Below are positions 4,882-53,553 of a stretch of 54,034 bases of DNA, in pieces. Numbering within the stretch: position 1 is the first letter of the stretch; the number at the start of each line of letters is the position of its first letter. Source of the stretch: Vitrella brassicaformis CCMP3155. Taxonomy: Eukaryota > Protista > Chromerida. The stretch spans positions 1 to 54,034 of the forward strand of contig CDMY01000545.1 in assembly GCA_001179505.1 (NCBI GenBank), in the 5' to 3' direction. The notes beneath the pieces are model-generated. The model was not told where the DNA came from, did not search any database, and worked only from the letters and a program-made list of their open reading frames with translations. The translations under genes were made by a program, and so were the position numbers.

Positions 4882-5793
4882 ATGGCGACTGTTCTCATGA
4901 TGATGATTCTGTGTGTGGCGTCGACCAGTGTCGCCACGGAGGCAAGACCCGCACAACAGGTGAGTATACACCCCCCCCCCCATGACCCAGTCATTAGATT
5001 CTCTGGCGTGCACGGCTGATTCGTGTGTTCAGGTCCAGTTGCGTGGCCTGCAGGTGTCCCCTCCTCGCAACACGTCGCTGTCTGCGTCAGAGTATGAGGC
5101 GCTGGTCGGCCTGATGGGGGGCGATGACACTACACAAGTCACCTCACTCTACCGGTAGACACACACATTATGCCATCAGACAGCCAATGGGCAGATTCCG
5201 TCTATGTGTGCGTGTGTGTATTGAAGGACGTCTGTCCACGGCACCAACTATAGCGACCTGCTGGACAACGTGGGCGAAACAAAGCCTCTCGTCTTTGTGG
5301 TCAGGAAGGACAAGTATGTCTTCGGCGTCTACGTCAGTGACGGCATCCAGCTGCCCGACGACTTGACTACCTGGCACAACTACGGCAGTGATGTGTCGTG
5401 GTTCTCAGTGGCCTCGACAAACCGACCGAGATCGAGATCGACGAAGAGGATCAGTATGTGAAAGTGGCGGGGAGGAAGGGGGCGTGGAGAGGAGGGATCG
5501 GTGGGGGAAATGCGAGGGTAGGGATCGGTGGGTTTGTGTATCTGGGTTGGGGTGGCTCTGTCCAGCCTGCTGCCGACATCCGTGTTTGCCAGCAGTCCAC
5601 TCGCAGCAAATATCTGCCTGAGGGCTACACGGGAAAGAGGGATGGTTATGGCAATGCTGTGTTGGGCGGGTCGCTGACGTTCATAGCTGACGAGATAGAA
5701 GTGCTGCAGACGCCTTTCATTTCGTCAGCGGCGCAGATGGGTGTCTGTCTGTCAGTCTGTCTGTGGCTGTCGCTATTCCTCTTTTCGATGTAA
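4882..5793 (+). pseudogene. Secreted TLDc-domain gene with a 7-nt frameshifting deletion (pseudogene or assembly error)
   Basis: Signal exon MATVLMMMILCVASTSVATEA, then SLSASEYEALVGL...SLY|RTSVHGTNYSDLLDNV...LVFVVRKDKYVFGVYV...WFS. The frame changes at 5413/5414 and continues ...LGGSLTFIADEIEVLQ. Clearly paralogous to 51526-53553. The 3' end is uncertain. Confidence 0.75.
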
Positions 5794-25868: not shown

Positions 25869-28123
25869 ATGGACGCCGCGGAGAGCGAAGGGAGTATCCG
25901 ACTTCCGTCTGAGGCAGCCAACCAGGACGACAGCAATGAGCTCAGACACCGACACGCCAGGCACAAGAGGAGAAGGCGCATCTCCGACGCCAGAGAAGCG
26001 GCGGTCAGTCTGTCAGATCACTCCACATCACACACGCCTCTCTGAGACGTCACGGGCCTTCCCGGGTGCGTGTGTGTGTTGGCAGACATCCATCCAGAAG
26101 TTCTACCGAGAGCGGTTGCAATTCCGGAAGTATCAATACGAGATACTGGTCAGCAGACTGACGGGGGATCTATCTATGCGCCGTGTGAGGGCGCGGCGCA
26201 TCCCCCTCTGTCTGTCTGTGGTTGTGTTGTTCGTGTGGTGTGTGGTCAGGTGCGTGGAATCATGACGGTTCGCGTGATGGCGTCGATCGAGGTGCAGCGT
26301 GTGTGGCGTGGCTACAAGGCACGAAGTGTTTACTACGAAGAACGTAACAGACTCGTGTTCAAGGTCAGCCAGCCAGTCGGCAAGACATCCAAGGACGGGA
26401 GAGCAGGGCAGGGCATGTATCTTGGTGTCATGGGTTGGTTCATCGATCAGTGGGAGTGGGACGATCCGGGACAGGAAGTCATGGTAACCAATCCATCCAC
26501 CACACACACAGATGCACACATCGGTCTTTATCTGTCGTCTGTTGCTGTTGCTTGCTGTGTGTCGTCTTCTATGCTATGCAGTTGGTTGGAGGTGCGTGTG
26601 TGCGTGTGGACCTTCCTGATGAATGACGAATGAATGACGGCCACTCACCGCTGCTTTTGTGTGTGTGTGTCGGTCTGTATCTGTATCTGCATCAGACTTC
26701 ACACGGGATCCATGGCGCGATCGTCTGGAGATGAAGTACTGCCGCCTGCGCCAGTGTTTCGTCAGACCGTGGGCATATATTCCGGGTAATGTATGGAGTA
26801 CTTACTCAGCAGCCAGCCAGCCAGCCAGCCAGTCAGGCAACACAAAGATGGACGTCGTTTCAATTGTTCTGTGTCTGTCTGCCCGTGTACGTATGTGCAG
26901 GGACGTATGTTTTTAAATTCGTCGTCAATGGTGAGAAAAATGGAGCGGCCGGTGCGGTGGTTGAAGGAATGGATGTGTTGGCTCGTCTGTCGGTCGGTGT
27001 GATCTTCATGTGTGCAGGCAACTGGGTGTGCAATGGGGCGCTGCCGCTGGTTCGTGATGCCCACGGCAACATGAACAATGTGCTCGATGTGGCCCCGAAG
27101 CCAACCAAGGAAAAGAAAAAGACACCTGGCGGTCAGTGCACTCACCGAGCCAACATCAGCCAGCCACGGTACAGTATACCTTTGTTTCCGTGTGCCTGCT
27201 GTATGTATGTCTTGCAGAGGAGGCAGCAGCGGCTGCGAGTGGTGGTGGCCCCCGCACATCATCGAGCTCGGGCAGCGGTGACCAACAGCCGCCCGGCCCG
27301 CCAGACAACAACACCAGCTCCACCACACCACCCACCGAAGGCCAACAGCAGCAGCAACAGCAACAACAACAACAGCAGCAGCAGCAGGGGGGCCGGAGCA
27401 AATCGGAGGCGCAGACGCAAACACAGCATAGCACAACGGCAGGACCCTCTGCGTGAGCAAACAAAAGGACACCCACACAATACATCCGCGAATTCATGCT
27501 GTTGTGTGCTGTGTTGTATTGTATTGTGCAGTAGCAAGCAGCCGCCCGGCCAGCACGCCAACAATCGGACATCGATGTTTGAAGTGGCCCTGGCGCAGGA
27601 GGCCGGGGGTGAGGGCGACGGCCACCCACCGTCTGCGGCGTCCGTCAAGTCCGATGAGATCCCCCGCCGCAGACACCAGCAGCAGCAGCAGCACCATGGG
27701 GGTCATCACGGCGTTGGTATGGCCCGTGCCAACGGTCCAGTGGTCAAGGAGCACAGCCGCAGCTCGCCGTCACTGCGGCTCGGCTCACAGGATGGCGGGA
27801 GGGAAGGGGAGAAGCTCACGCAGCCACCGCACCCCGTGTCAGCCGACCAGATCAGCAGCAGGGTGCACGGCAAGCAGCTGGTGCATCAGGATGGCCTCAC
27901 CAACCATGCCGTCAGCAACGGTCCCTCCAACAGCACCAACAACGGCAACAATGCCTCTTCCTCCACGCCCCAGTTCCCTCCCGGTGTGCAGTCGACCAAG
28001 CAGTTCGGGCTGCTGGCCATCCCGCGGCTCAAGCTGGACAACGCGCTGCACGAGGGGCGGGCACGGACACACCAGAGCGTCCTCAAGATGATGCGCGGAT
28101 CGCACTCACAGGTCATCCTGTGA
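25869..28123 (+). CDS. Protein with two IQ motifs, a CBM48/AMPK-beta-type carbohydrate-binding module and a low-complexity tail
   Basis: MDAAESEG...EAA|TSIQKFYRERLQFRKY (IQ1); IEVQRVWRGYKARSVY (IQ2); WEWDDPGQEVM|LVG|DFTRDPW...PG|TYVFKFVVNG|NWVC...DAHGNMNNVL (CBM48); poly-Q; ends SQVIL-TGA. Confidence 0.85.
27343..27387 (+). repeat. CAA/CAG trinucleotide repeat encoding Q15
   Basis: In frame once the phase-1 intron GGC G|gtcagt...gcag|AG GAG is spliced. Confidence 0.85.
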
Positions 28124-37541: not shown

Positions 37542-40193
37542 TCACCACATGTCCTTGGAGTCAAGAGTGTTGCCGCTGTGCCCCTTGACGCGCTCAAACA
37601 CGATCGCGCCGATGCCGTCACACAGCTTGCCGCCAAGCTGTGGGTCAATGGCGGGCTCAAAGTGCACGCCAGTCCACAGGCGGCTCTCGGCGCACACAGT
37701 CGCTATCTCGTCAAACGATTCCCACCTGAAGGAGATGCATCCATCCATCCATCCATTTGATGTGTCATTCAGCTGCATGTGAGTGTGTGTTTGTGGTTAC
37801 TCACTCGACGATAAGGTCTGTCGTTGGCGACATGCCCGTCTCGACGAGGGATGATCCCTTGGGGAAATATGCCTTCAGCTTGCCGCTGATGTCGAAGCCC
37901 TCAAATGCGGTCTTTGCGAACTCCATCGTTGCACGGCACAAGCACGCTGACCCCGACGGATACTCTGATGGAGCGATTGAGTGATGGAGTGCACGGCGAT
38001 CGAGGGAGGCAAAGGACACATAAGGACAAGAGGGTACAGTTGCACGCCTTGCTGCACCGATCGCACCTGTGTGTGGCATAGTTCTAAAGTAGGACTTCCA
38101 GTCCCTCCCCATGATCGGCTTGACGCCCTCCTTTGGCACGTACGCGGAAAATCTGACAACCACAATTGCATCCATCCATGTGTGTCTGTCCATCCATCCA
38201 CGTGGGTACGTTTGTACGTTTCGTTTTGAAGAAAGTGTTGGATGAAGGACTGCGGTCTGACGGCTTCGTGGAAGATCTTCTCCTTCCAGGCCACAATGGT
38301 GGCGTCGTGCAGCAGCCCGACGTAGCCCAAGTCGATAGCCGTGAACTCTTCAAAGGTCATGTCCAACGGCTGACAGACACACAACAGCGGCACGTAGAAT
38401 GGTTTGTATGTGTTTGGCCGGTTCATTTGCTTGTGTGCGGTGCTCACCTTGATGAGCTGGAGGAGTGTCGAGCCGAGGGAATACAGCTGAGCGAGCGAGA
38501 CAGATAGACACAAAGACCATATACGTATACATGTACGCCGATTCAAGCATATTGTACATATTTCGCTCACTCTCACCTTGTTATCAAAATACTCTCCGAT
38601 CGCCTTCTTCTTCTCTGACATACCGCCACACACGCAAGACAAGACACACGCGTCAGTCATGCGTGTCTGGCCCTCCATGAGTCAATCACATCCGCCGCCC
38701 GTTCACCGACCGTCGAGCTCGAGTGATTCTTCGATGACCTTCCAGGCCCTCTCCTTCAGCACATCTACACAGCTCGTGTCGTTACCCTTTGGCGGCTCCC
38801 CCTGGTGGCCCGGGTCCCTCTTGTGTGGCGTGTCCTGGACGCAGTTGAAAATCGGTGGCGACCTCCTGATGTCGACCTGCTGCTGCGTCAGGAAGAAGGG
38901 CCGCACTCTGCCCGCCTGAGGGGTGATGTGTTGCTGTACCACATTGTAGCCATAGCGCGTGCCAGAACCATCGAGCCCCTGTGTTTAGGGAGGGCGGGAG
39001 GCAGGGAGAGACATGCATAGAGACGCATCGATGCGAGCGGTGCCGATGCATCCATCCGATGGGCAAGTCGTGTGTGTTTGTGTACCTCTACCTCAATGAG
39101 TGGCTGCCAGTAGGTGGGATACACGAGCTCGTATGGGTCGTTTACAGGCTTGTAGCCGGTCCAGTCCTCATAAGGCAGGCCATTGTGCTCGTGCAGCATG
39201 GTGCCGTCCCTGTTGTATCCGTCGTCGTTGAACCACTCTACAGTCTCCCTCGCCACCAGGTTACCCAGGCCTGCAGCCGTCTCCTCGTCGGCCTCCGTGT
39301 CCAACGGATTGTAGCCCAGCAGCGGCATCACTTGCTTAAAAGCCTCAGCTGTACATTCGCATGCCATCCGATCAATCCCACGACCGATCAGTGAGGTGCT
39401 CGCTCTTCTGCTGACCTGCTCGAGGTATGAGGATCCTCTGGAATTCGTAACACGCATGGACGCCAGCCTCCTGGCGGTTTCGGTGGGTCCGCATGTGCTT
39501 CGGCGCGCGGCGATCGGGGCCAAAGAAGACGTGCCAATCGTCAGTGAAGGCCGCCACGGCGTGGAAGATGGCCACAGTCAGCATCAGGTTGTGGGCGTTC
39601 TGAACCGGTGGCTCGTATGTGAGAATGTTCGGCGCCCACAGCGCGATGCACATGAGGGTGGGAATTTCCTTGACGTATTGCAAGAGCCCGACATCGAAGG
39701 TATTGGCGAGCACCACACTGGGCATACTGAACACATCCTCCCAGAAGGCACGGGGCAGCCTGTCGGTGAACTCGGCTGAACGACACAACACAACACACAA
39801 ACAAACAAACGATCGACACCCTTTTACCGTTTGTCTGCCCCGTGTCGGTCTGTACGTACCAAGTCCGAGCCTTGTGAGCGCCTGCAGCTTGCCCTGCAGG
39901 CTCTCTGCGGCCTCGAGCGGGCTGAACGGTCCCATGTAGTCGCTCTCCTGCGGCGTAAGGAATCCTCCGCCGAGCAAGTTGCCGGCCGTCAAGTTGCCCC
40001 CCGTTTCCAGCCGCGTTTCCGCCGCCTGTCCAGCGGCATGTAGTGGTGGGAAGAGGAGGTCCACGATCTCACCGAGCGGGCTCTTTGGCCTCGCCTCCCC
40101 CTTCTCATCCGGACCCTCTGCGCCACAGCGAAAAAAAACAGCCGGGACCAGGAGAAGAAAGAACGCCGCGACCGCCGGCCTGAGCACCGCCAT
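37542..40193 (-). CDS. Secreted vanadium-dependent haloperoxidase-like (PAP2 superfamily) protein (~10 exons)
   Basis: Signal peptide MAVLRPAVAAFFLLLVPAVFFRCGA; WKEKIFHEAVRP (motif 1); MPHT|EYPSGSA (motif 2); ESRLWTGVHF (motif 3); N-terminal DGYNRDG...YEDWTGYKPVN...WQPL and QQHITPQAG segments. Confidence 0.88.
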
Positions 40194-40407
40194 ATTCGTT
40201 CACCAGCACTCGATTCGCTCAAGCGCTTCACGTCAAGCGGGCTGCGGTTTGCTGCATGACGATCCACTCTACAGTGCCTTGTACGCAAGGGGACTGTTAA
40301 CCTAGCCGTTGAGTCTTCGTGCAGTGACTTAATCGACGTGTGAGCGGCTGTGAAGCACGTCAACCAGATAGATACACACGATACACACGGGCTCTGAAAC
40401 TGTGCAG

Positions 40408-40935
40408 ATCTGTGACGAGGCGGACGAGCGGAGCGCAGAGAGTGAGTCGTCGTAGGATTGCCTCGCCGGTCGTAGTTGAGCCGGACGCAGCTGACGTTTC
40501 AGCCTGCCAGTGGTGGGGGGTGGGTTTGTCCGACGCCATTCTTCTCGTGCCTGCAGGTTCCACCCACACACACACACAGGGAGAGGAGAGAGAGATACCC
40601 GCATCCATCCATCCATCCGTCGATCCATCCGTCCGTCCGTCCGTCCGTCCGTGTGTCTGTCCGTCTGATTTCAAGGCCGGGCCGTCCTCCAGGCCAGTGC
40701 CTCGTCCACCTACCATCCCCTCCCGCCCGGCCCACTGCCTGCAACCGTCCAGCCTCGCCCCCCCATCATGCCAACTCTGGAGGCGACGGCAGCCCGAGAC
40801 CCCTGGACGGGAGCGCTGCCGGACGGTTTGGTGATTGACACAGATGAGGCGGCCAGGGACGGGAAGTGGAGCATCGACCATGTCAGGGCCTTCTGTGTCC
40901 TTCGTGCGGGGGAAGCCGTATGGCCCCTCGACTGA
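40408..40935 (+). CDS. Possible small hypothetical gene (at least two exons; start not identified)
   Basis: Exon 40408-40556 (...VEPDAADVSACQWWGVGLSDAILLVPA G|gt) joins in phase 1 to exon 40676-40935 (GRAVLQ...DPWTGALPDGLVID...HVRAFCVLRAGEAVWPLD-TGA). Confidence 0.4.
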
Positions 40936-51525: not shown

Positions 51526-53553
51526 CTACAAGAGCCCCAACGTGCAGATCACCATCGCTACCACCACCCCGCCCCACCACAATCCCCCCCCACACACCGC
51601 TGCGCTCTCAGTCGGATCGGGTGGTGTTGACGTTAGCGGTGTTGCCGTAGAGGTTGGGGGGGTTGTCTCGCTGGGTGTTGGTGTCGGCTCGGGCTCGGAA
51701 GTGGATGTTCTCGTCGGCTCCGATGTCGGTGTCGGCTCGGGGGTTGTTGTTGTCGGCTGTGGGGGGGGGGCTTGTGGTCGGCTGAGGCGGAGTAGGAGTG
51801 CTGCGCGGCTCGGCGATCTCTCCGCGCACTTGCAAGATTTCTATATCATCAGCCATGAAAACCTCCGACCCGCCCAGCGGAACGGCTCGATCGCCCTGAT
51901 TCCCTGGATTCTCGTAGCCCGGAGGCAGCCAATTCCACTCAGTCAGCTGACTGCAGTTGCGGATGTCGGCAGCAGGGCGACTGCATGTGCCGTCGCAGTT
52001 ACCGTCGGCCAGGAAGAACTCACCATAGGAAGAACTCACCATAGACATCCTTGCAGCTGTATCTCGGCCACCCCACCGCCAATCACGCCGCACAGTCCCC
52101 CGCCTTCCCGCCACATCGCATGTCACCCTCTGAGGTATGTCGATCCTGGTCGGATTCTTGTAGCGTCCCGATAGTGAGAACCAAAACACCTCACACTTGT
52201 ACTTGTGGCTCTCTACCGCATTGGCGGGCGGCCGGATGCCTTCGCTGATGTAGACACCGAACAGATACGGGCCTTCGCGGATGACTATCATCAAGTCCGT
52301 CTCATTCTCCACACGGTCCAGCAGCTCGCCATACGATGCTCAATCCACAGAGGCCCTGTATCACACACACACACAACAAACAGCCACTGTAAGTGCTTTG
52401 ATGCACCACACGTGAGTGTGTTTGAACAGACACATACCGGTGGAGCGTGTCGACCATCGTGTCATTTGATGGCTTCAGCAGGCTAAGCAGCCCGCCGTAC
52501 TCCACATCAGATAGCGACAAGCCGGCAGGTGGTTGAGCAGGCGGTGGCGGGGGGGGCGGGGCAGTCGGTTGTGGCGGGTACACTTGAAGCACCTCTAGCT
52601 CATCTGCCCGAAACTCAAACGACCCCGCCAGCCAAGCATACTTACGGTCGCCCCTGTCGGTGGGGTCACCAGAGTTTCCCCCCCGCACACCCTCGTAGCC
52701 GTCTGGAACATACTCTATGGGGATGTCTTGAAAGCCGCTGTCGATCCAGCCATCGTCATAATACGGCTCGTTCAAGCCCAACATCAACCTTCCGCCGATA
52801 AGCACCCTCGATCCACACGCGATGTCCCAGGCGCTGGGTATACGGTCACAGTAGTCTCCCACCCTGCCCACCACCCGTATCTCCTGCCACGATTGCCATA
52901 GCTTGATTTCGGTCGGCGTGTCGAAGTGGCCCGCCAGTGAGAACCACGACACCTCACTCTTGTAGATATGCATCTTGGTCGCGTTGGCGGGAGTTTGGAT
53001 GCCGTCTTTGATGTAGACGGCAAAGAGATACTGGTCTTTGCGGATCACAATCACCACGTCCGTCTTGTTCTCCACAAGGTCCAGCAGATCGCCATAAAAT
53101 GTGCCGTCCCAAGTGGCCCTGCATGCCACACATACACACACACACACACACACACGACAGACAGCTATTGTTGATGAGGTGCACCAAAATACACATCTGT
53201 ATATATGTGTGTATACCGACCTGTAGAGGGTCGTGAGCTTCGTATCGTTCTTTGCTTCCAGCAGGCCACGGAGGCCCTCGTATTCTGACTGAGACAGGTT
53301 GGTGCCGACCGGAAAAGTGTCCTGCAAACGACGCACCTACACACGAATGCACAGTCAGAGAGCCGCAGACAGACAGACAAACAGACAGACATCGAGGAAA
53401 GGCAGCTGACTGATTACGTTGCGGGTGCGTGTGTGAGCGTGAGTGTGCGTGTGGTACAGACGTACATACCTCGTGTGTTGTGCTTGTGGGCGTCGAACAG
53501 AGGGCGAGCGTGACGGCCAAGGCCAACAGCATCATGCCACGGAGAGCCACCAT
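51526..53553 (-). CDS. Signal peptide + TLDc + Pro linker + TLDc + Pro/Thr stalk + GPI-like tail (carries an in-frame TGA and a homopolymer frameshift)
   Basis: MVALRGMMLLALAVTLALCST...; TLY|RATWDG...VIVIRKDQYLFAVY...LAGSFEFRADELEVLQV; second domain LH|RASVD*ASY...LGGSEVFMADDIEILQV; PTTTTPEPTPTSEPT...; ESAAVCGGGLWWGGVVVAMVICTLGLL-TAG (51526-51528). Confidence 0.75.

What the first reader, a model, noticed from the sequence alone, without database searches (positions are those of the whole stretch)
37542..40193. Secreted vanadium-haloperoxidase-like enzyme with His-to-Ser in the PSGH motif
Seen: signal peptide; WKEKIFHEAVRP, with the same K-x6-RP spacing as Curvularia VCPO K353/R360; YPSGS (Ser codon at 37948-37950); SRLWTGVH, with R-x5-H as in R490/H496. 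Established: VHPOs and PAP2 phosphatases use PSGH, where the His corresponds to VCPO H404. Inference: either halogenation chemistry in a marine alveolate (organohalogen defence, antifouling or wall cross-linking) or a variant phosphatase or inactive scaffold. The gene is intron-rich, so it is not bacterial contamination, and a bacterial origin is possible.
Basis: partly seen in the sequence, partly recalled or inferred. Interest (0 to 1): 0.8.

Follow-up and report, generated by a model that had tools for sequence, protein, structure and literature searches.

The report
Secreted NapH1-type vanadium halogenase in Vitrella
This gene of the coral-reef alga Vitrella encodes a secreted enzyme of the bacterial "site-selective" vanadium halogenase family, and the serine that looked like a defect is that family's normal catalytic residue, paired with a lysine that the gene also keeps.

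Summary
A 10-exon gene on the minus strand (37542-40193, Vitrella brassicaformis) encodes about 627 aa: an N-terminal hydrophobic leader, DUF6851, and a VCPO-type helical bundle carrying K-x6-RP, PSGS and SR-x5-H. The Ser codon TCA (37950-37948) is unchanged in all four public runs laid.

The His-to-Ser change is not an anomaly. NapH1 (active chloroperoxidase) reads PSGS and esVHPO reads PSAS. In both, this Ser forms a dyad with a lysine proposed to carry a haloamine. The Vitrella protein has that lysine (YFDNK, 38579-38577), the acidic gate residue and the conserved glycine.

Among 58 family representatives, Lys pairs with Ser or Thr in 32 and Gly pairs with His in 12.

The public gene model (621 aa) uses a cryptic acceptor inside the Ser codon and deletes EYPSGS. 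A spliced contig with no mismatches supports the upstream acceptor, which keeps the motif.

Three paralogues share all nine intron positions and have dN/dS of 0.2-0.3. In the tree they sit in a fully supported clade with green-algal proteins and unlabelled transcripts, apart from all 28 labelled prokaryotes. A recent bacterial transfer is therefore unlikely.

Activity and substrate are untested. First-stage readers of this scan also flagged the two paralogues on other pieces of the genome.

The parts
37542..40193 (-). Whole gene, ATG to stop. It has 10 exons and encodes about 627 aa with the RNA-supported acceptor (621 aa in the public model P0151).
   Evidence: The exon blocks of P0151 map exactly onto the window.
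39860..40193 (-). Exon 1. It holds the signal-like leader (first ~25 codons, 40193-40119) and a low-confidence, paralogue-conserved N-terminal extension.
   Evidence: pLDDT about 50 over the first 100 residues of paralogue P0001.
39416..39775 (-). Exon 2: N-terminal helical bundle and start of DUF6851.
   Evidence: PF21167, E 4e-10. The intron 1 joint is seen in X6.
39086..39348 (-). Exon 3: second half of DUF6851, including the PYEDWTGYKPVN and YWQPL blocks.
   Evidence: E 2.9e-32; NapH3 E 2e-18. Joint 39348|39416 is seen in X6 and X1.
38711..38978 (-). Exon 4: interconnecting region with a Vitrella-specific Cys-containing insertion.
   Evidence: Joint 38614|38711 is seen in X6 and X1.
38577..38614 (-). 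Exon 5 (KKKAIGEYFDNK). Gate Asp is at 38585-38583, aligned with esVHPO E327. Dyad Lys is at 38579-38577, aligned with NapH1 K324 and esVHPO K329.
   Evidence: alignments, with chain offsets of 4 and 20 checked against the papers' numbering. (Lys in 17/17 rows of the eukaryote clade).
38448..38486 (-). Exon 6 (LYSLGSTLLQLIK). Gly at 38474-38472 aligns with esVHPO G334 at the pocket entrance.
   Evidence: Joint 38486|38577 is seen in X1.
38218..38369 (-). Exon 7. It holds K-x6-RP (Lys 38279-38277, Arg 38258-38256, Pro 38255-38253), which aligns with esVHPO K373 and R380.
   Evidence: invariant in all 109 rows.
38067..38152 (-). Exon 8.
   Evidence: Joints 38152|38218 and 37964|38067 are seen in X1.
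37805..37964 (-). Exon 9 with the RNA-supported acceptor. P-S-G-S lies at 37959-37948. The Ser at the His position is 37950-37948 (TCA), aligned with NapH1 S427 and esVHPO S429.
37947..37966 (-). Two competing acceptors of intron 8. AG 37966-37965 is supported by a spliced contig. AG 37948-37947 is the one used by the public model; it overlaps the Ser codon (TCA|G) and removes EYPSGS.
   Evidence: Paralogues read TCAACG and TCGGCG, so they have no second AG.
37542..37725 (-). Exon 10. It holds S-R-x5-H (Ser 37685-37683, Arg 37682-37680, His 37664-37662, the vanadate-binding His, aligned with esVHPO R490 and H496). The stop codon is 37544-37542.

Best explanation
The gene encodes an expressed enzyme of the secretory pathway. 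It belongs to the NapH1/esVHPO branch of vanadium-dependent haloperoxidases, the 'site-selective' VHPOs with a DUF6851 N-terminal bundle.

Inferred mechanism, taken from the characterised bacterial members:
1. Vanadate binds to His (SRLWTGVH) and is held by Lys and Arg (KIFHEAVRP), Arg (SR) and the Ser-Gly-Ser loop.
2. H2O2 and a halide form a vanadium-bound hypohalite.
3. The Ser at the former His position polarises the hypohalite.
4. The halogen passes to the nearby Lys (YFDNK) as a haloamine.
5. The haloamine halogenates a bound organic substrate, so free hypohalous acid is not released.

Shown here: family membership, conservation of every one of these residues, the fold (on the 85%-identical paralogue), splicing that keeps the motif, and purifying selection. 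Inferred: vanadate dependence, halogenating activity, selectivity, secretion and the substrate, which is unknown. The Ser is the ancestral state of this branch, not a change made in Vitrella.
For: - Sequence: NapH1 E 2e-42, esVHPO 3.8e-41, XhnO11 1.9e-37. Pfam DUF6851 and VCPO_2nd.
- Fold of paralogue P0001 (85% identical; pLDDT 83, pTM 0.81): TM 0.87 to XhnO11 and 0.85 to holo-NapH1, against 0.70 for Zobellia VIPO and 0.44-0.49 for CiVCPO.
- Residues: the PSGS Ser aligns with NapH1 S427 and esVHPO S429. The YFDNK Lys aligns with K324 and K329. Asp aligns with gate E327, and LYSLG Gly with G334.
- Papers: S429A and K329 mutants lose substrate bromination, and the dyad is absent from the non-halogenating NapH3. 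The Lys and Ser are used as selectivity markers in PMC13519999.
- Covariation in a motif-unbiased sample of 58 representatives: (Lys,Ser) 22, (Lys,Thr) 10, (Gly,His) 12.
- Expression and gene model: a spliced contig with no mismatches keeps EYPSGS, and six junctions are confirmed.
- Selection: dN/dS 0.31, 0.21 and 0.20 among the three paralogues. All nine intron positions are shared.
- Leader: one N-terminal hydrophobic core, also present in the other eight clade members examined, Neomeris after a long N-terminal extension. Bacterial AQ-VHPOs are likewise mostly secreted (PMC11312541).
Against: - No biochemical data exist for any eukaryotic member.
- Identity to characterised enzymes is only about 26-33%.
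- esVHPO D421 aligns with Pro, and H436 (needed for alkyl-quinolone bromination) aligns with Thr. The substrate pocket therefore differs.
- Run X6 holds a contig that runs unspliced through intron 8, and the runs laid are contigs, which hide rare isoforms. Use of the downstream acceptor (protein without EYPSGS) cannot be excluded as a minor or conditional form.
- X1 is only guessed to be RNA, though spliced joints argue for it.
- The structure was predicted for the paralogue, not for this gene's own joined product.
Confidence: 0.65

Rival explanations
1. It is a non-halogenating VHPO homologue like NapH3 or MarH2. The fold and vanadate-type pocket would be reused for another reaction, such as a rearrangement, without halide chemistry.
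For: NapH3 is almost as close in sequence (E 1.6e-37) and in fold (TM 0.84). No substrate is known for the algal clade.
Against: NapH3 lacks both dyad residues. It reads EHT where Vitrella reads DNK, and PSGF where Vitrella reads PSGS. The paper notes that the dyad is absent from NapH3. Vitrella keeps Lys, Ser, the gate Asp and all vanadate ligands.
Confidence: 0.12
2. It is an active vanadium haloperoxidase that is not substrate-selective. Once secreted, it would release free HOBr, HOCl or HOI into the cell surroundings for antifouling, defence or wall cross-linking, as macroalgal VHPOs are thought to do.
For: It carries a secretory leader. esVHPO K329R leaks HOBr, which shows that the fold can release HOX. 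The pocket residues of the bacterial enzymes are not conserved (position +7 is Thr, not His).
Against: The Lys-Ser dyad, acidic gate and pocket-entrance Gly are all kept. In this family they accompany retention of HOX. Known HOX-releasing VHPOs carry His at this position and lack the Lys.
Confidence: 0.13
3. It is a PAP2-type acid or lipid phosphatase, as the UniRef name 'Phosphatidic acid phosphatase type 2/haloperoxidase' suggests.
For: It shares the superfamily motifs K-x6-RP and SR-x5-H. PAP2 acid phosphatases match the C-terminal bundle weakly (TMt 0.5-0.6, E about 0.02).
Against: The PSGH His, which in PAP2 enzymes protonates the leaving group (established knowledge), is Ser. The best PAP2 hits are many orders of magnitude weaker than the VHPO hits. 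There are no membrane helices beyond the leader. The tree places the protein inside the NapH1-type clade, not among phosphatases.
Confidence: 0.05
4. It is an inactive copy or scaffold. Either this paralogue is decaying, or its real mRNA uses the downstream acceptor and lacks the vanadate loop, as in the public model.
For: The public model P0151 lacks EYPSGS. The cryptic AG exists only in this copy. An unspliced intron-8 contig is present in X6.
Against: The spliced contig supports the motif-keeping junction, and no contig shows the other one. dN/dS is 0.21-0.31 with all catalytic residues intact. The reading frame is intact over all 10 exons.
Confidence: 0.05

Closest known systems
NapH1 (Streptomyces sp. 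CNQ-525 vanadium chloroperoxidase, PDB 3W35/3W36)
   Same: The architecture is the same: DUF6851 bundle, interconnecting region and VCPO-type bundle. It reads PSGS with Ser at the His position (S427) and has the dyad Lys (K324, ENK against DNK in Vitrella), K-x6-RP and SRxWxGVH. Sequence E 2e-42 (P0151, this gene's public model); TM 0.85 for the model of paralogue P0001.
   Different: Identity is only 26%. NapH1 is a bacterial enzyme acting inside a meroterpenoid biosynthetic cluster. The Vitrella gene has nine introns, a eukaryotic secretory leader, an N-terminal extension of about 110-150 aa and a Cys-containing insertion. No cluster was seen next to it.
esVHPO (Enhygromyxa salina alkyl-quinolone bromoperoxidase, PDB 9PTR) and the AQ-VHPO subfamily
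   Same: It has the Lys-Ser dyad (K329-S429) with the same 44-residue spacing from the dyad Lys to the vanadate Lys. An acidic gate lies two residues before the Lys, and the pocket-entrance Gly is at +5. D355 and D98 align with Asp and Glu. It also carries an N-terminal secretion signal.
   Different: H436, T358 and N359 of the quinolone pocket are not conserved (Thr, Tyr, Val), and D421 aligns with Pro. The same substrate is therefore unlikely.
Green-algal homologues (Bryopsis sp. KO-2023 BSKO_10492, Ostreobium quekettii, Neomeris dumetosa) and unlabelled marine transcripts
   Same: These are the nearest relatives outside Vitrella, in one clade with 100/100 support. All carry the Lys, and all but one (Thr) carry Ser. 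The five checked (Bryopsis, Ostreobium, Neomeris, P0003, P0017) have an N-terminal hydrophobic leader.
   Different: Identity is about 27-30%. They are shorter (about 510-600 aa), lacking the Vitrella N-terminal extension and insertion. Ostreobium's gene span equals its ORF length, so it has no introns. None has been characterised.
Curvularia inaequalis VCPO and macroalgal VBPOs
   Same: They share the superfamily motifs for vanadate binding (K353/R360, S402-G403, R490/H496).
   Different: They have His404 instead of Ser, no dyad Lys and no DUF6851 domain. The fold match is much weaker (TM 0.44-0.49 for VCPO, about 0.2 for algal VBPOs). They release free HOX.

Membership tests
Vanadium haloperoxidase / PAP2 superfamily | Three motifs: K-x6-RP, PSG-x and SR-x5-H, with the His that binds vanadate. 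| tested here: met
   KIFHEAVRP, PSGS and SRLWTGVH align with those of NapH1 and esVHPO. K, R, S, R and H are invariant or nearly so in 109 aligned rows.
NapH1/esVHPO-type (DUF6851) VHPO | Significant full-length sequence similarity and the DUF6851 N-terminal domain. | tested here: met
   PF21167 E 2.9e-32 on exon 3. NapH1 E 2e-42 and esVHPO 3.8e-41 over about 420 residues.
NapH1/esVHPO-type (DUF6851) VHPO | Two helical bundles joined by an interconnecting region, superposable on NapH1. | tested here: met
   The model of the 85%-identical paralogue P0001 (pLDDT 83) gives TM 0.82-0.87 and rmsd 2.8-3.8 Å to 9L8X, 3W36 and 8CXL. The window's own joined product was not folded.
Site-selective VHPO (Lys-Ser dyad class) | Ser (not His) after PSG/PSA, aligned with NapH1 S427 and esVHPO S429. 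| tested here: met
   The chain-index offsets (4 for 3W35, 20 for 9PTR) reproduce the papers' numbering. The codon is unchanged in the four runs laid.
Site-selective VHPO (Lys-Ser dyad class) | Haloamine-forming Lys, aligned with NapH1 K324 and esVHPO K329. | tested here: met
   YFDNK aligns with IMENK and LFEDK. NapH3 has Thr at this position. Lys is present in 17/17 rows of the eukaryote clade.
Site-selective VHPO (Lys-Ser dyad class) | Acidic gate residue (esVHPO E327) and pocket-entrance Gly (G334). | tested here: met
   Asp lies two residues before the Lys, and Gly at +5 (DNKLYSLG against EDKIRSLG).
Site-selective VHPO (Lys-Ser dyad class) | Vanadate-dependent, regio- or stereoselective halogenation without release of HOX. 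| not testable with these tools
   This needs enzyme assays. No eukaryotic member has been assayed in the papers found.
AQ-VHPO subfamily (alkyl-quinolone brominases) | Conserved substrate-pocket residues (esVHPO H436, T358, N359). | tested here: not met
   These align with Thr, Tyr and Val. No member of the eukaryote clade has His at +7.
PAP2 acid/lipid phosphatase | His in PSGH acting as general acid. | tested here: not met
   The residue is Ser (TCA, 37950-37948). The PAP2 structural hits are weak and partial.
NapH3/MarH2-like non-halogenating homologues | Loss of the Lys-Ser dyad. | tested here: not met
   Both dyad residues are present in Vitrella. NapH3 reads EHT and PSGF.

The most novel reading that the evidence does not exclude
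Chromerid and siphonous green algae, and perhaps other protists, carry a eukaryote-specific clade of secreted Lys-Ser-dyad vanadium halogenases. These would be the first site-selective VHPOs outside bacteria. In the coral-reef setting shared by Vitrella and Ostreobium, they may halogenate exogenous small molecules such as bacterial signalling compounds, rather than make the alga's own metabolites.
Probability: 0.15. Interest if true: 0.75.

Novelty: new member of a known kind. Interest (0 to 1): 0.45.

Why it matters
Site-selective vanadium halogenases have so far been characterised only in bacteria, in natural-product pathways and in quorum-signal bromination. They are of interest as biocatalysts.

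This gene shows that the same catalytic set (vanadate ligands, Lys-Ser dyad, acidic gate) is kept under selection in three intron-bearing, expressed paralogues of a chromerid alga, and in a clade that includes green seaweeds. That points to unexplored halogenation chemistry at the surface of marine eukaryotes. It also gives a clear set of eukaryotic enzymes to assay.

The work corrects the public gene model as well. By choosing a cryptic acceptor, that model deletes exactly the six residues of the vanadate loop.

It also removes a false lead: the Ser is not a loss-of-function change.

Tried and rejected
- NCBIfam scan of the six exon pieces found nothing.
- PDB searches with exon 4 and with exons 5-7 read through their introns found nothing. 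The intron-derived residues spoil short queries.
- The word-based protein search found only the three Vitrella paralogues, Bryopsis and two weak hits, both with P0001 and with a 14-sequence profile. It scored only the top 8000 candidates. Relatives came instead from the exhaustive representative search with exon 3.
A 6-row alignment worked, but one of its two patterns contained PS[GA]S, so those 78 loci are biased towards Ser. Ser frequencies are therefore taken from the unbiased set.
- Pfam on ten neighbouring ORFs found no biosynthetic neighbours.
- Recent bacterial transfer or contamination was rejected on three grounds: introns, shared intron positions in the paralogues, and placement in a eukaryote clade.
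- No paper in the held library mentions DUF6851, or links Vitrella to vanadium or haloperoxidase; the two papers that mention both Vitrella and halogen are unrelated. No paper listed links ulvophytes to them either.
- The public model P0151 and paralogue P0001 stood in for it, and dN/dS was summed exon by exon without joining.
Full report
**Gene model and observation**

Reading the minus strand gives a 10-exon gene from ATG 40193 to stop 37544-37542. All nine introns are GT..AG and 65-107 nt long. The exons are:

| Exon | Coordinates |
|---|---|
| 1 | 40193-39860 |
| 2 | 39775-39416 |
| 3 | 39348-39086 |
| 4 | 38978-38711 |
| 5 | 38614-38577 |
| 6 | 38486-38448 |
| 7 | 38369-38218 |
| 8 | 38152-38067 |
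| 9 | 37964-37805 |
| 10 | 37725-37542 |

- the leader MAVLRPAVAAFFLLLVPAVFFRCGAEG;
- WKEKIFHEAVRP in exon 7;
- YPSGS in exon 9, with Ser = TCA at 37950-37948;
- SRLWTGVH in exon 10.

The leader has a single hydrophobic core at residues 7-21, and there is no other membrane-like stretch. No dedicated signal-peptide predictor was available, so secretion is an inference.

**Organism, public model and splicing**

The contig belongs to Vitrella brassicaformis CCMP3155. The public protein for this gene, P0151 (621 aa), matches my model everywhere except one place. It reads RTMPHT|ACLCRAT and so lacks exactly E-Y-P-S-G-S. It uses an AG at 37948-37947, formed by the Ser codon TCA and the following G, instead of the AG at 37966-37965.

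The two paralogues read TCAACG and TCGGCG at this spot. They have no second AG, and their public models keep EYPSGS.

Contigs of four public runs were laid on the gene.
- Run X1 has a 211-nt contig with no mismatches that joins 37964 to 38067. It skips 102 nt, with CT..AC on the plus strand, which is GT..AG on the gene's strand. This is the upstream acceptor, which keeps the motif.
- No contig shows the 120-nt skip of the public model.
- Five further junctions of my model appear as joints: 38152|38218, 38486|38577, 38614|38711, 39348|39416 and roughly 39775|39860.
- X3 and X5 run through introns and look like DNA.
- X6 has spliced joints, but also one contig that runs unspliced through intron 8. 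That intron is 102 nt, in frame and without a stop.

Caveats: the runs are contigs, which drop rare isoforms, and X1 is only guessed to be RNA.

**Family**

Pfam finds DUF6851 (PF21167) in exon 2 (E 4e-10) and exon 3 (E 2.9e-32). It finds weak VCPO_2nd hits in the short C-terminal exons. The precomputed domains of the full proteins are PF21167 plus PF22778.

Against solved structures, P0151 matches:

| Structure | E-value |
|---|---|
| NapH1 (3W35) | 2e-42 |
| esVHPO (9PTR) | 3.8e-41 |
| NapH3 (8CXL) | 1.6e-37 |
| XhnO11 (9L8X) | 1.9e-37 |

An AlphaFold model of paralogue P0001 (85% identical; pLDDT 83, pTM 0.81) was compared with the PDB by Foldseek:

| Target | TM-score (target-normalised) |
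|---|---|
| XhnO11 | 0.87 |
| holo-NapH1 | 0.85 |
| NapH3 | 0.84 |
| Zobellia iodoperoxidase | 0.70 |
| Curvularia VCPO | 0.44-0.49 |
| Red- and brown-algal bromoperoxidases | about 0.2 |

PAP2 acid phosphatases match only the C-terminal bundle.

**The serine**

NapH1, an active chloroperoxidase, itself reads EYPSGSTSLC, and esVHPO reads EYPSASAAFC. The chain-index offsets are 4 for 3W35 and 20 for 9PTR. With them, the aligned residues come out as NapH1 S427 and K324, and esVHPO S429 and K329.

These are the residues that the cryo-EM study (10.1101/2025.10.24.684477) calls the Lys-Ser dyad of selective VHPOs. That study reports:
- vanadate bound to H496 and held by K373, R380, R490, S427 and S429;
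- S429A keeps iodide oxidation but loses substrate bromination;
- K329 variants lose halogenation;
- the dyad is absent from the non-halogenating NapH3;
- an acidic gate (E327) and G334 are conserved.

A later survey uses the NapH1 Lys and Ser as markers of selectivity (PMC13519999).

In the window gene, DNKLYSLG aligns with EDKIRSLG of esVHPO and ENKLWGIG of NapH1. The Lys lies 44 residues before the vanadate Lys, as in esVHPO. NapH3 has EHT and PSGF at the corresponding places.

In an alignment of 109 family members:
- the eukaryote clade has Lys in 17/17 rows;
- it has Ser in 15 rows, Thr in one, and the gap of P0151 in one;
- the eight His-type DUF6851 proteins all have His and none has Lys, six of them with Gly instead.

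In the motif-unbiased sample of 58 representatives, the pairs at these two positions are (Lys,Ser) 22, (Lys,Thr) 10 and (Gly,His) 12, with the rest scattered.

The His-to-Ser difference is therefore the hallmark of this branch and covaries with the Lys. It is not a lesion.

**Differences from the characterised enzymes**

esVHPO H436, T358 and N359 (the quinolone pocket) align with Thr, Tyr and Val, and D421 aligns with Pro. The substrate is therefore unlikely to be an alkyl quinolone.

The Vitrella proteins also carry a low-confidence N-terminal extension of about 110-150 aa. In addition they have a Cys-containing insertion in the interconnecting region.

**Evolution**

Vitrella has three paralogues: P0151 (this window), P0001 (85% identical) and P0152 (70% identical), on three contigs.
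- All nine intron positions are shared.
- Exon-wise Nei-Gojobori dN/dS is 0.31, 0.21 and 0.20, with dS of 0.22-0.70.
- Paralogue transcripts are visible in the laid contigs. A 3.1-kb transcript contig encodes P0152 without interruption.

Outside Vitrella the closest named proteins are from green algae: Neomeris, Ostreobium, Bryopsis and, more distantly, Coleochaete. An amoeba (Willaertia) has one too.

Prokaryotic relatives of 27-33% identity occur in Streptomyces, Gammaproteobacteria, Acidobacteriota, Chloroflexota, Myxococcota and others.

An IQ-TREE analysis was run on 56 rows with LG+C20 and rooted on the His-type proteins. It puts the Vitrella trio in a 17-row clade with 100/100 support. 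That clade also holds Neomeris, Bryopsis, Ostreobium and unlabelled transcripts. All 28 labelled prokaryote rows form a separate clade (100/99). FastTree on 119 rows agrees.

One unlabelled member lies on a gene-poor 16-kb contig and another on a single-gene 1.9-kb contig, which fits eukaryotic DNA and mRNA.

The family's breadth in bacteria suggests a bacterial origin, but that is inference. The transfer was not recent and was not directly into Vitrella. Neither the direction nor the number of transfers is settled.

**Context**

No biosynthetic genes were recognised next to the gene. Both paralogue loci have a TLDc-domain gene head-to-head immediately upstream. In this window, TLDc-like sequence lies 11.6 kb and 32 kb away.

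**Verdict**

This is an expressed member of the known NapH1/esVHPO class under purifying selection, most likely secreted. Its full catalytic set is intact, so vanadate-dependent halogenation through a Lys-bound haloamine is the best-supported mechanism (confidence about 0.65). Rivals are a non-selective HOX-releasing peroxidase, a NapH3-like non-halogenating enzyme, a phosphatase and an inactive copy.

What is new is the host range (a eukaryote clade of this class, uncharacterised in the papers searched) and the corrected gene model.

Noticed in passing
L081:1256-2820 (-) and L082:300-2738 (-); window 51818-53327 (-) and 4922-5712 (+): Both paralogous VHPO loci have a TLDc-domain gene (PF07534) immediately upstream, head-to-head with the VHPO gene. 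In this window, TLDc-like sequence lies on the same contig but 11.6 kb and 32 kb away. This may be a duplicated VHPO+TLDc pair, or chance in an expanded TLDc family.
   Followed up: partly
window 37965-38066 (intron 8): Intron 8 is 102 nt, in frame and free of stops. Run X6, which shows spliced joints elsewhere in the gene, holds a 283-nt contig (37814-38096) that runs straight through it. Retention would insert 34 residues just before EYPSGS.
   Followed up: no
window 40325-40400: Depth in all four runs jumps 10-50 fold at 40329-40400, and many contigs have loose ends at 40325-40380. This looks like a dispersed repeat just upstream of the gene's 5' end.
   Followed up: no
window 26789-28120 (+): A 444-aa ORF has a weak match to the AMPK1_CBM glycogen-binding module (E 4e-06, just above the Pfam cut-off).
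   Followed up: no
P0102 (Willaertia magna KAL9649587.1) and P0008 (Coleochaete scutata): Further eukaryotes carry DUF6851-type VHPO homologues outside the main algal clade. Willaertia has Lys with PSGT. Coleochaete lacks the Lys (Phe) and reads PSGA with GR instead of SR, so it may be a non-halogenating derivative.
   Followed up: partly
window, introns and flanks of the gene (for example 37740-37760, 38190-38215, 40560-40600): Short GGATGGATGGATGG-type (GGAT)n runs recur in introns and intergenic DNA around the gene.
   Followed up: no
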